Below, in pieces: positions 14,201-17,200 of a DNA stretch of 64,000 bases (positions are counted from its first letter, which is position 1; each line of letters opens with the position of its first letter). The position numbers and the translations under genes were made by a program. The notes under the pieces were generated by a model. The model had not been told where the DNA came from and did no database searches. It saw nothing but the letters and a program-made list of their open reading frames with translations. The stretch covers positions 139,934,001-139,998,000 of the forward strand of contig NC_059425.1 of NCBI RefSeq assembly GCF_021028975.2. Direction: 5' to 3'. Origin of the DNA: Sphaerodactylus townsendi. Lineage: Eukaryota.

Positions 14201-17200
14201 GGTCACGTGGGGGGCGGCAGCGTCGGCTGCTGGCTGCCGGTTATGGCTGGGCTGCTGGGGGCGGATGTGCAGCCCAAGCAGGCCTCCTTGTGGGCGTGCT
14301 GAGGCTGCCTGAGACGCACGGAGTTTGAGGGGGCGGGCCCACAGCTTGAACAGGCACCACATGTGACCTGTGTCTAGCATACGGCTTGAAGAGGAGCAAC
14401 AGAAAGACTGCTGTAAAGGGAGGCCTTTCCACTTCTGTGAGTCCCTAAGCGCCTGCCTGCCGGAGCCTGAAGACAAACAACAGGTCAGGTAAGCAGCACG
14501 CAGGCACTGGCTGGCAGGCAGCCAGACTGGCCTTGGATTGATCCGGCCGGGCGGGTAGGGGCGGCAACGACTACCCGCTGTTTGGGAGGGTGTGGGGTGG
14601 CCTGGGCGACTCTCTTCCTCCCCTCGGCTGCTCTGGGGGTGTTTGCGCGCTCCCTGGCCGGCAGGGCCTTTTGCAAGGATTTTTCTCCTGTAAGAGCCTG
14701 CAAGAAAGTCTCCAGCTCTCTTACAGGAGAAAAATTCCTTGCAGAAGGCCCTGCCGTCCATGGAGTGCGCCAAACACCCCCAGAGCAGCCGAGGGCAGCC
14801 CCAGCCAGGTCTTGATCCGAGGGGGGGGGCGGGCGAGCCGCTGTTTGGGAGGGTGGGGGGTGGCCTGGGTGACTTTCTTCCTCCCCTCGGCTGCTCTGGG
14901 GGTGTTTGCGTGCTCCCTGGCCTGCAGGGCCTTTTGCAAGGATTTTTCTCCTGTAAGAGCCTGCAAGAAAGTCTCCAGCTCTCTTACAGGAGAAAAATCC
15001 TTGCAGAAGGCCCTGCCGTCCATGGAGTGCACCAAACACCCCCAGAGCAGGCGAGGGCAGCCCCAGCCAGGTCTTGATCCGAGGGGGGGGGGCGAGCCGC
15101 TGTTTGGGAGGGTGGGGGGTGGCCTGGGTGACTTTCTTCCTCCCCTCGGCTGCTCTGGGGGTGTTTGGCGTGCTCCCTGGCCGGCAGGGCCTTTTGCAAG
15201 GATTTTTCTCCTGTAAGAGCCTGCAAGAAAGTCTCCAGCTCTCTTACAGGAGAAAAATCCTTGCAGAAGGCCCTGCCAGCCAGGGAGCGCCCCAAACACC
15301 CCCAGAGCAGCCGAGGGCAGCCCCAGCCAGGTCTTGATCGAGGGGGTGGGGGGGGCGAGCCGCTGTTTGGGAGGGTGGGGGGTGACCTGGGCGACTTTCT
15401 TCTTCCCCAGGGCTGCTCTGGGGGTGTTTGCGGGCTCCATGGCCGGCAGGGCCTTTTGCAAGGATTTTTCTCCTGTAAGAGAGTCTGCAAGAAAGTCTCC
15501 AGCTCTCTTACAGGAGAAAAATCCTTGCAGAAGGCCCTGCCGGCCATGGAGCGCGCCAAACACCCCCAGAGCAGCCGAGGGCAGCCCCAGCCAGGTCTTG
15601 ATCCTGTGATCTCAATTTGTGAAGAGAGGTCCTTGATAGATGGACTTGAGTGTGGAGACAGGACCTTGAAAAATGGATTCTAGAGTTTGGTCGGCAGGGC
15701 CTTTTGCAAGGATTTTTCTCCTGTAAGAGAGTCTGCAAGAAAGTCTCCAGCTCTCTTACAGGAGACAAATCCTTGCAGAAGGCCCTGCCGGCCATGGAGC
15801 GCGCCAAACACCCCCAGAGCAGCCGAGGGCAGCCCCAGCCAGGTCTTGATCCTGTGATCTCAATTTGTGAAGAGAGGTCCTTGATAGATGGACTTGAGTG
15901 TGGAGACAGGACCTTGAAAAATGGATTCTAGAGTTTGGTATCAGTATTATGCAGTATGTTGTGAGAGAATCCTCAAGATGGGAACTCTTGGTGTTTTTAC
16001 TGAAATGTTTATGATTCCAAGAATAGTTCCCACAGTATAAAGACAATAAAGGCATGTGACTGTAACAAATCTATACCATGGAAGACTAATTCCAACGTAT
16101 TGTACAGAAATATTTGTATTTTATTTCAAGTTAAGTTATTTTATAAAGAATAATTTATTTTAAGCTATTCCAAGTTTTCTAAGTTACGTTATTTCTAAAG
16201 ACTGTGAATTCATGTTAGTAAGTGCCTTTCATTGTTATTGTTAAAATTTGCCCCTTTCCCTCCATCCTTTCCTTCCTGGCTCTGTACTGTATTTCTAATG
16301 CTGGGGGGCAACTGGGGGTGAAGATATAACACCATGAAACATTTTCATAGCAGTAATAAAACATTTTGAAAGCATTTTGAGAATGTTTTCAACATTTTTT
16401 ATTTCTGCTGTGTGGCATGGCCCATTGCTGTGTTCTGTTCAGATTTGGGAGTTAGGACATGTTCTATAATGAGATGGTGACTTTGAGATGACCTGGTGCA
16501 AAAAATCATTCATTGGTAGTAGTGGTGGAGGGCAGCTGCCCATATGCGCAAAACTCAGATTTCGTCCCGGGCTACATTTTCCCTAGCTACCCCCCTGTGG
16601 CAGGTTGATATAATTGTACGGAAGATTAATGATGTGTTACCAACAGCGCAGTGATTAAAACAGAATCTGCTGTTTGTAATATCTGGGAAGGCAATATAAA
16701 GATTTCAAAAGTGCTTGAATGGTGATGGCATGTTCTTCCATCTAATACGATACTATATTATTAGAAGCTTGCACTCAGAAGCTTATGTTTGTGTCCTTTT
16801 TATTGCAGCAATTAATTTTGAAGAACATGGAATGCTATTCCTCTTTTCTTTTAATTTTTTAAAAAAACTTAGATTTGTCTAATGATATCTAGGCTAAAAT
16901 TACTCTTTAGGTGTCTTTTTAAAAAGACACAATAATAACCCTTTCACAACTTATTCAGACAAATCAAATTACCTGAACACTGCAGCTGGGACAGAATCTG
17001 GGCACCTTCAAAATGGTGGCTCGTCATCTTTAGGTTAGGCTTGATGCACCGAATGAAGCTAGATCCCTATATTGGAAGAGAGCAGGTTAGCAATAGCACA
17101 AGAGTACCTGTTAATCACTGAAGAGTAAAAATAACAGATTTTGAAGCTTCAGCTCTACTGACTCCATAGGCATCCTAACAAATGATTTTGAGGTTTAAGA

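What the first reader, a model, noticed from the sequence alone, without database searches (positions are those of the whole stretch)
14575..15939. Tandem array of long hairpins carried inside a hAT-type transposon in a MYO6 intron
Seen: five near-identical cores, each a fold-back. In unit 1 the left arm is 14621-14696, the loop is 21 nt, and the right arm is 14718-14795. Arms pair with only a few mismatches, and units repeat at 263/259/263 bp. The array sits in a 2.46-kb element with an 8-bp TSD and no transposase. Established: MYO6 pre-mRNA reads through this intron, and long intramolecular dsRNA stems are substrates for ADAR and potentially Drosha/Dicer; long DNA palindromes can form cruciforms. 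Inference: this could be a mobile polycistronic hairpin-RNA (endo-siRNA or miRNA-like) cassette that can silence its own family in trans, or simply a TE-born satellite in its earliest stage. TSD and TIR decay contrasts with near-identical, CpG-rich units, suggesting the array expanded or homogenised after insertion.
Basis: partly seen in the sequence, partly recalled or inferred. Interest (0 to 1): 0.78.

Follow-up and report, generated by a model that had tools for sequence, protein, structure and literature searches.

The report
Hairpin array inside a young transposon
A 2.46-kb non-coding cut-and-paste transposon (hAT-like) landed recently in a myosin-VI intron and brought with it a row of five long hairpin-forming repeats. 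It is a striking but ordinary piece of mobile DNA, with no sign so far that the hairpins serve as RNA.

Summary
Four 263/259/263-bp units, plus a fifth hairpin made by a 248-bp duplication, each carry a fold-back with ~80-nt arms and a 21-nt loop (the fifth left arm is cut to ~48 nt).

The element is a real insertion. Contigs of two closely related organisms join window 14133 directly to 16598, so 14134-16597 (2,464 bp including one 8-bp target duplication) is absent there. It is present in the window's own organism. It lies in one 5.7-kb MYO6 intron, 373 nt from the donor; MYO6 is on the minus strand.

All four organisms hold the family in many copies. No transposase domain is present.

The 263-bp units differ by 2.7-6.1%, more than the 1.3% flank divergence to the nearest empty-site relative. 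The main array was therefore carried in, not grown after insertion. Only the 248-bp duplication (2 differences) could be later.

I found no sequence sign of selection on the hairpins:
- pairing within units is no better than between units;
- there are no compensatory changes;
- both strands fold equally;
- arms vary as much as spacers.

No RNA runs were available, so an RNA role is untested.

This scan already noted what looks like the same family on another piece of this genome (s1-743032). Verdict: a non-autonomous hAT-like transposon with a family-borne palindrome array, of low to moderate interest.

The parts
14134..14141 (.). Left copy of the 8-bp target-site duplication (TGGCAAGT)
   Evidence: Read directly. 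The empty-site contigs of organisms B and D join 14133 to 16598 and keep one copy.
14142..16597 (.). The inserted element, 2,456 bp, non-coding
   Evidence: Empty site in X4 record 11 and X6 record 27. Filled junctions in X1 records 4 and 8. No Pfam domain.
14142..14154 (+). Left terminus CACTGGCATAGCT (imperfect terminal inverted repeat)
   Evidence: 9 of 13 bases match the reverse complement of the right terminus.
14142..14574 (.). Unique GC-rich left part (65% GC, CpG observed/expected 0.55)
   Evidence: No significant similarity to the repeat unit.
14575..15606 (.). Four tandem units of 263, 259, 263 and 247 bp, each a spacer plus a palindrome
   Evidence: Pairwise identity is 93.9-97.3%.
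14618..14798 (.). Fold-back 1 (arms 14618-14696 and 14718-14798, 21-nt loop)
   Evidence: -153 kcal/mol on the + strand, -152 on the - strand.
14881..15060 (.). Fold-back 2
15140..15320 (.). Fold-back 3 (80-nt arms, 94% complementary without gaps)
15403..15584 (.). Fold-back 4
15688..15832 (.). Fold-back 5: left arm cut to ~48 nt (15688-15735), right arm full length
15440..15935 (.). Two copies of a 248-bp tandem duplication (15440-15687 and 15688-15935), differing at 2 sites. It created fold-back 5.
15936..16302 (.). Unique AT-rich right part of the element
16303..16597 (.). Right-terminal ~295 bp, shared with a far more abundant (MITE-like) repeat. It holds a small hairpin at 16346-16412.
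   Evidence: Summed contig depth is about 7-9 x 10^5 against ~90 in the flank in X1.
16585..16597 (-). Right terminus (reverse complement CAGGGGGGTAGCT)
16598..16605 (.). Right copy of the target-site duplication (TGGCAGGT)
16971..17063 (-). MYO6 exon upstream of the intron (myosin VI residues 664-693)
   Evidence: E = 2e-15 to myosin-VI chains.
11144..11272 (-). Start of the next MYO6 exon (myosin VI residues 694-736)
   Evidence: E = 8e-24 to myosin-VI chains. The residues follow on directly from the exon above.

Best explanation
This is one copy of a multi-copy, non-autonomous, hAT-like DNA transposon of 2,456 bp. A transposase encoded elsewhere mobilised it. It inserted recently into a MYO6 intron in the lineage of the window's organism and duplicated 8 bp of target.

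The palindrome array is cargo that already existed in the source copy. The inferred history is:
1. An inverted duplication made an ~180-bp palindrome.
2. The palindrome plus an ~80-bp spacer was amplified in tandem, by replication slippage or unequal exchange, to four 263-bp units, which then diverged by 3-6%.
3. A 248-bp duplication, with one breakpoint inside a left arm, added a fifth, truncated hairpin very recently.

The array needs no function to persist. As a by-product, the MYO6 pre-mRNA (antisense to the + strand) must contain five ~80-bp duplexes. These could be bound by dsRNA-binding proteins or edited.

Shown here: the structure, the insertion, the multi-copy status, and the relative ages. 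Inferred: hAT membership, the order of duplications, and the absence of function.
For: Precise empty site:
- A 2,568-nt contig of organism B and a 1,999-nt contig of organism D, both at single-copy depth, join window 14133 to 16598 with no extra letters.
- Contigs of organism A cross both junctions.
- The 8-bp direct repeat TGGCAAGT/TGGCAGGT flanks CA...TG termini.

Multi-copy family:
- Summed contig depth across the element is ~10-300 times the flank in all four organisms.
- A joint from 14635 to 16515 in B and D looks like an internally deleted relative.

Non-autonomous: no Pfam domain at E <= 1 apart from sub-threshold noise.

Array older than the insertion: units are 93.9-97.3% alike, against 1.3% flank divergence to B. 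All units share the same fixed arm mismatches, so the palindrome predates the amplification.

No sign of selection on the structure:
- Intra-unit arm complementarity is 89-94%, against 88-95% between units.
- 0 of 79 pairs are compensatory, and the changes break pairs.
- The + and - strands fold equally well.
- 7.5% of arm columns are substituted, against 9.2% in the spacer.
Against: - hAT membership rests only on TSD length and termini. The left end (CACTG) departs from the usual YARNG, the TSD does not fit nTnnnnAn, and no autonomous partner could be looked for.
- Copy number comes from summed depths of short-read contigs, which the tool itself warns are not copy numbers.
- With four or five units, the tests for structural constraint have little power.
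- No RNA data exist here, so a small-RNA or editing role is not excluded.
Confidence: 0.78

Rival explanations
1. Mobile hairpin-RNA cassette: the array is transcribed, from the MYO6 pre-mRNA or from the element's own GC-rich left part. It is processed into endo-siRNAs or miRNA-like RNAs that act in trans on the same family or on its transposase source.
For: - Each unit forms an ~80-bp near-perfect duplex.
- The element lies inside a transcribed intron.
- Many related copies exist as potential targets.
- The left part is GC-rich with a raised CpG ratio.
- There are weak hits to miRNA models.
Against: - The Rfam hits are far below gathering score (45.7 against 68; 38.7 against 63), as expected for any perfect hairpin.
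- 80-nt arms are too long for a canonical pre-miRNA.
- There are no compensatory changes, no excess of intra-unit pairing, no strand bias and no lower substitution rate in the arms.
- No RNA run holds the stretch.
Confidence: 0.07
2. Nascent satellite growing at this locus: the array expanded or was homogenised after the element inserted here.
For: The two 248-bp copies differ at only 2 sites. The T at 15484, shared by units 4 and 5, is read as C in every family contig laid there. So this last duplication may be private to this copy.
Against: The four 263-bp units differ by 2.7-6.1%. That is several times what could accumulate since an insertion younger than the 1.3% split from organism B. No homogenisation is seen: units 1-3 and unit 4 keep distinct variants.
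Confidence: 0.1
3. The unit number is partly an assembly artefact, for example a falsely duplicated 248-bp block.
For: The short-read contigs do not span the array. The 248-bp copies are 99.2% alike.
Against: The units carry distinct substitutions and indels. The duplicated copies also differ at 2 sites, which a simple assembly stutter would not produce.
Confidence: 0.05

Closest known systems
Non-autonomous hAT elements and hAT MITEs of lizards (e.g. the hAT-N and hobo-N families catalogued in Anolis carolinensis, PMC3014272)
   Same: 8-bp target duplication, CAG-type short termini, no transposase, a length of 0.1-2.4 kb, hundreds to thousands of copies, and recent activity in a lizard genome.
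   Different: None of the TIRs listed in that catalogue resembles CAGGGGGGTAGCT. That paper does not mention internal palindromes or tandem arrays. Dfam and Repbase could not be searched.
Foldback-type transposons with internal tandem repeats: Tetris of Drosophila virilis (PMC4079207) and Galileo (PMC4168063)
   Same: DNA transposons whose body holds tandem repeats and long inverted structures. Such repeats can seed satellite DNA.
   Different: In those elements the tandem repeats make up the long terminal inverted repeats. Here the termini are short and each internal unit is itself a palindrome.
Drosophila hairpin-RNA (hpRNA) loci (PMC10292708, PMC10317233); also maize Mu killer and MITE-derived miRNAs such as human miR-548 (these last from my own knowledge, not checked here)
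   Same: Long inverted repeats, sometimes in tandem, whose transcripts fold into duplexes and can yield small RNAs that silence related sequences.
   Different: Those loci are defined by small RNAs and by targets, and nothing of that kind is available here. The arms are also much longer than a pre-miRNA.
TE-derived satellites (e.g. tandem TE dimers as satellite seeds, PMC5932611)
   Same: Head-to-tail repeats born inside or from a transposable element.
   Different: There are only five units, confined within one element, and no independent array was seen in the window.

Membership tests
hAT superfamily (non-autonomous member) | 8-bp target-site duplication | tested here: met
   The empty sites in organisms B and D keep one copy of the 8-mer. 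The filled site has TGGCAAGT and TGGCAGGT on either side.
hAT superfamily (non-autonomous member) | Short terminal inverted repeats beginning YARNG | tested here: inconclusive
   The right end CAGGG fits. The left end CACTG does not. The termini match at 9 of 13 bases.
hAT superfamily (non-autonomous member) | Target preference nTnnnnAn | tested here: not met
   TGGCAGGT does not fit in either orientation. This is a weak statistical preference that varies between families (PMC3014272 table), so one site decides little.
hAT superfamily (non-autonomous member) | An autonomous partner with the same termini encoding a hAT transposase | not testable with these tools
   No search of this genome or of Dfam/Repbase is on hand. 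The copy itself has no Pfam domain.
microRNA precursor families (Rfam mir-493, mir-3747) | Score at or above the family's gathering threshold | tested here: not met
   45.7 against 68 bits, and 38.7 against 63 bits. Hits occur on both strands.
hpRNA / endo-siRNA locus | A long intramolecular duplex | tested here: met
   79-83 pairs per unit, z = -12.
hpRNA / endo-siRNA locus | 21-23-nt small RNAs mapped to the arms | not testable with these tools
   No RNA run holds the stretch.
Satellite DNA | Long head-to-tail arrays that exist independently of a carrier element | tested here: not met
   There are five units inside one transposon, and no other copy in the 64-kb window. Genome-wide status was not tested.
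Foldback transposons | Long terminal inverted repeats built of tandem subrepeats | tested here: not met
   The termini are ~13 bp and imperfect. The palindromes lie 430-660 bp from the ends.

The most novel reading that the evidence does not exclude
The family is a self-mobilising carrier of tandem hairpin-RNA genes. Wherever a copy lands in a transcribed intron, it delivers several ~80-bp duplexes that are diced into small RNAs acting on the family itself or on its autonomous transposase. That would be a vertebrate counterpart of Mu killer or of the Drosophila hpRNA loci, but spread by transposition.
Probability: 0.06. Interest if true: 0.7.

Novelty: new member of a known kind. Interest (0 to 1): 0.3.

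Why it matters
The presence/absence pattern among close relatives shows that a cut-and-paste transposon family was active very recently in this lizard lineage. It also gives a clean, dated example of a transposon moving a ready-made array of long palindromes into a gene.

Such copies are natural test cases for three questions:
- how tandem repeats born inside transposons spread;
- how vertebrate cells handle long intronic dsRNA;
- whether long palindromes destabilise a locus.

The MYO6 intron is 43% longer in the carrier than in the relatives with the empty site. Filled and empty species therefore offer a direct comparison for effects on splicing or editing. By itself, with no RNA evidence and no sign of constraint, it is ordinary mobile DNA.

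Tried and rejected
- **Rfam scan:** only sub-threshold miRNA hits on both strands. I reject these as generic hairpin matches.
- **Self-BLAST of the element against the 64-kb window:** no other copy.
- **Two metagenome scans:** one with a 32-mer from the arm, one with a 28-mer from the right terminus. Both found 0 hits, so no further copies could be fetched.
- **The look-up of sequencing runs:** no RNA holder, so expression, small RNAs and editing could not be examined. All runs are short-read contigs, so the unit number could not be checked with long reads.
- **Pfam on six ORFs:** nothing above threshold.
- **A degenerate 'unit 0' upstream of the array:** the local alignment score is no better than shuffles, so I dropped the idea.
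- **The Anolis DNA-transposon catalogue:** no matching TIR.
- **The search of earlier findings by sequence:** blank.
- **Helitron:** considered and rejected, because there is a target duplication and there are CA...TG ends.
- **Precise excision in B and D instead of a late insertion:** considered and rejected as less parsimonious. It would need two independent footprint-free excisions.
- **MYO6 exons:** searched one by one by reference.

Full report
**What is there**

The stretch 14575-15939 is a genuine tandem array.
- Tandem Repeats Finder reports a 263-bp period over 14575-15852 (4.9 copies, 89% matches). It reports a second, 248-bp period over 15440-15939 (2.0 copies, 99%).
- Units begin at 14575, 14838, 15097 and 15360.
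- Each unit holds a palindrome with ~80-nt arms around a 21-nt loop: 14618-14798, 14881-15060, 15140-15320 and 15403-15584.
- A fifth hairpin (15688-15832) has a left arm of only ~48 nt. It was created by a 248-bp tandem duplication (15440-15687 to 15688-15935) whose left breakpoint lies inside the left arm of unit 4.

The structure is far beyond chance.
- One unit folds at -187.6 kcal/mol, against -118.7 +/- 5.7 for dinucleotide shuffles (z = -12.2).
- As DNA, palindrome 3 gives z = -19.6.
- A 32-mer from the arm occurs nine times on both strands, against none expected.

**The carrier is a transposon, and the insertion is young**

I laid Logan contigs of four coded organisms on 12800-17800.
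- In organism B, one 2,568-nt contig matches 13379-14133 and then runs on without a break at 16598-17800.
- In organism D, a 1,999-nt contig does the same (13917-14133, then 16598-17800).
- Both contigs are at single-copy depth.
- In organism A, whose contigs are essentially identical to the window, contigs cross both junctions (to 14171, and from 16565).

So 14134-16597 (2,464 bp) is an insertion that two close relatives lack. It consists of one 8-bp target copy plus a 2,456-bp element. The flanking 8-mers are TGGCAAGT and TGGCAGGT. The termini are CACTGGCATAGCT and, in reverse complement, CAGGGGGGTAGCT, which match at 9 of 13 bases.

Flank divergence is about 1.3% to B and 2.6% to D, counted from the 'other letters' of those contigs. 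The simplest reading is an insertion in the A lineage after its split from B.

The ORFs in the element are repeat-generated and match no Pfam family above threshold. The copy is therefore non-autonomous.

**It belongs to a multi-copy family**

Summed contig depth across the element is roughly 10-300 times that of the unique flanks in all four organisms. In X1 it is 1,200-27,000 against ~90. The tool warns that such sums are not copy numbers, so I read them only as 'many copies, in all four organisms'.

A contig joint from 14635 to 16515 in B and D looks like an internally deleted relative.

The last ~295 bp (16303-16597) is about 10^4 times the flank, far more than the rest. It contains a small hairpin at 16346-16412. 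The right end is thus shared with a much more abundant MITE-like family.

This fits what I see, but I could not read that copy. Other notes report many hairpin MITEs with hAT termini in this genome, and another calls it a lizard. I treat these as leads only.

**Genomic setting**

MYO6 runs on the minus strand.
- The exon 16971-17063 (-) matches myosin VI residues 664-693 (E ~2e-15).
- The exon starting at 11272 (-) matches residues 694-736 (E ~8e-24).
- So 11273-16970 is one intron of 5,698 nt.
- The element lies 373 nt downstream of the donor and makes up 43% of the intron.
- The pre-mRNA carries the reverse complement of the + strand, which folds just as well.

The exons were searched one at a time by reference.

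**Age of the array against age of the insertion**

The four 263-bp units are 93.9-97.3% identical to each other. That is two to five times the total divergence between A and B in the flanks.

All units share the same fixed arm mismatches, for example TTTTGCAA on the left arm against TTCTGCAA on the reverse complement of the right arm. So the palindrome formed first and was then amplified together with its spacer.

The main array therefore predates the insertion and was carried in. The imperfect TIRs belong to the element itself.

The 248-bp duplication is different. It differs at only two sites (15443/15691 and 15518/15766). The T at 15484, which units 4 and 5 share, is read as C in all family contigs laid there. 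This last step may therefore be private to this copy and possibly post-insertion.

**Is there any sign that the hairpins are maintained as RNA?**

Four tests were possible, and all were negative.
- Arm complementarity within a unit (88.9-93.8%) is no higher than between left and right arms of different units (88-95%).
- RNAalifold on the four full palindromes finds 79 pairs and none with a compensatory change. The variable positions break pairs.
- Both strands fold equally well, so the G-U pairs of one strand are not favoured.
- Substituted columns are as frequent in the arms (7.5-7.6%) as in the spacer (9.2%).

One site is suggestive but isolated. At alignment columns 38 and 147, unit 3 has C-G, unit 4 has A-T, and units 1 and 2 have a C/T mismatch.

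With only four or five units these tests are weak. They show no support rather than refutation.

The Rfam hits to mir-493 and mir-3747 are well below gathering score and occur on both strands. No RNA run holds the stretch, so expression, small RNAs and editing remain untested.

**Most likely mechanism**

This is a non-autonomous, hAT-like element, mobilised in trans, whose interior grew in steps:
1. an inverted duplication;
2. tandem amplification of the 263-bp module;
3. a late 248-bp duplication.

The array rides along as cargo. The hAT label rests on the verified 8-bp target duplication and the CA...TG short imperfect termini. The left end and the target sequence do not fit the textbook consensus, and no autonomous partner could be sought. 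I hold it as probable, not proven.

A by-product that follows from established biology, but is not shown here, is that the MYO6 pre-mRNA of carriers contains five long duplexes.

**Comparison with known things**

- The closest kin are the non-autonomous hAT families of lizards (PMC3014272). None of the TIRs listed there matches, and internal arrays are not described there.
- In architecture it recalls Tetris and Galileo, which combine tandem repeats with fold-back structure (PMC4079207, PMC4168063). In those elements, however, the repeats form the long TIRs.
The defining small RNAs are not available here.

**Verdict**

The 'post-insertion expansion' inference is rejected for the main array, and the RNA-cassette reading is untested and without sequence support.

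It is a new member of a known kind, already met once by this scan on other DNA of the same genome. Interest is low to moderate.

Noticed in passing
window 12967-13467: An extremely abundant repeat: summed contig depth is about 10^5 times the unique flank in all four organisms. There are many internal deletion joints and a shared loose-end consensus. It is probably a SINE.
   Followed up: no
window 16303-16597: The right ~295 bp of the element is about 30-700 times more abundant than the rest of the element. It carries its own small hairpin (16346-16412). The 2.46-kb element seems to share its right end with a very abundant MITE family.
   Followed up: partly
window 14635 -> 16515: One contig each in organisms B and D joins these two points, skipping 1,879 bp. 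This is likely an internally deleted derivative of the same family elsewhere in their genomes.
   Followed up: no
window 15484 and 15732: The T shared by units 4 and 5 is read as C in every family contig laid at 15484. It may be a private marker that dates the 248-bp duplication to this copy's own lineage.
   Followed up: partly
alignment A1 columns 38 and 147 (window 14655/14764, 15177/15287, 15440/15551): This is the only candidate covarying site. Unit 3 pairs C-G, unit 4 pairs A-T, and units 1 and 2 have a C/T mismatch.
   Followed up: partly
window 17476-18450: Another repeat (contig depth ~50 times the flank from 17476) runs into a GC-rich block (60-64% GC at 17850-18450) in the next MYO6 intron upstream.
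   Followed up: no
window 14160-14500: The left part of the element looks promoter-like: GC boxes, a CACGTG motif, a CpG ratio of 0.55, and then a CAGGTAAG donor-like site near 14485. It could be the remnant 5' end of a transposase gene or a captured host fragment. I judged this by eye only.
   Followed up: no
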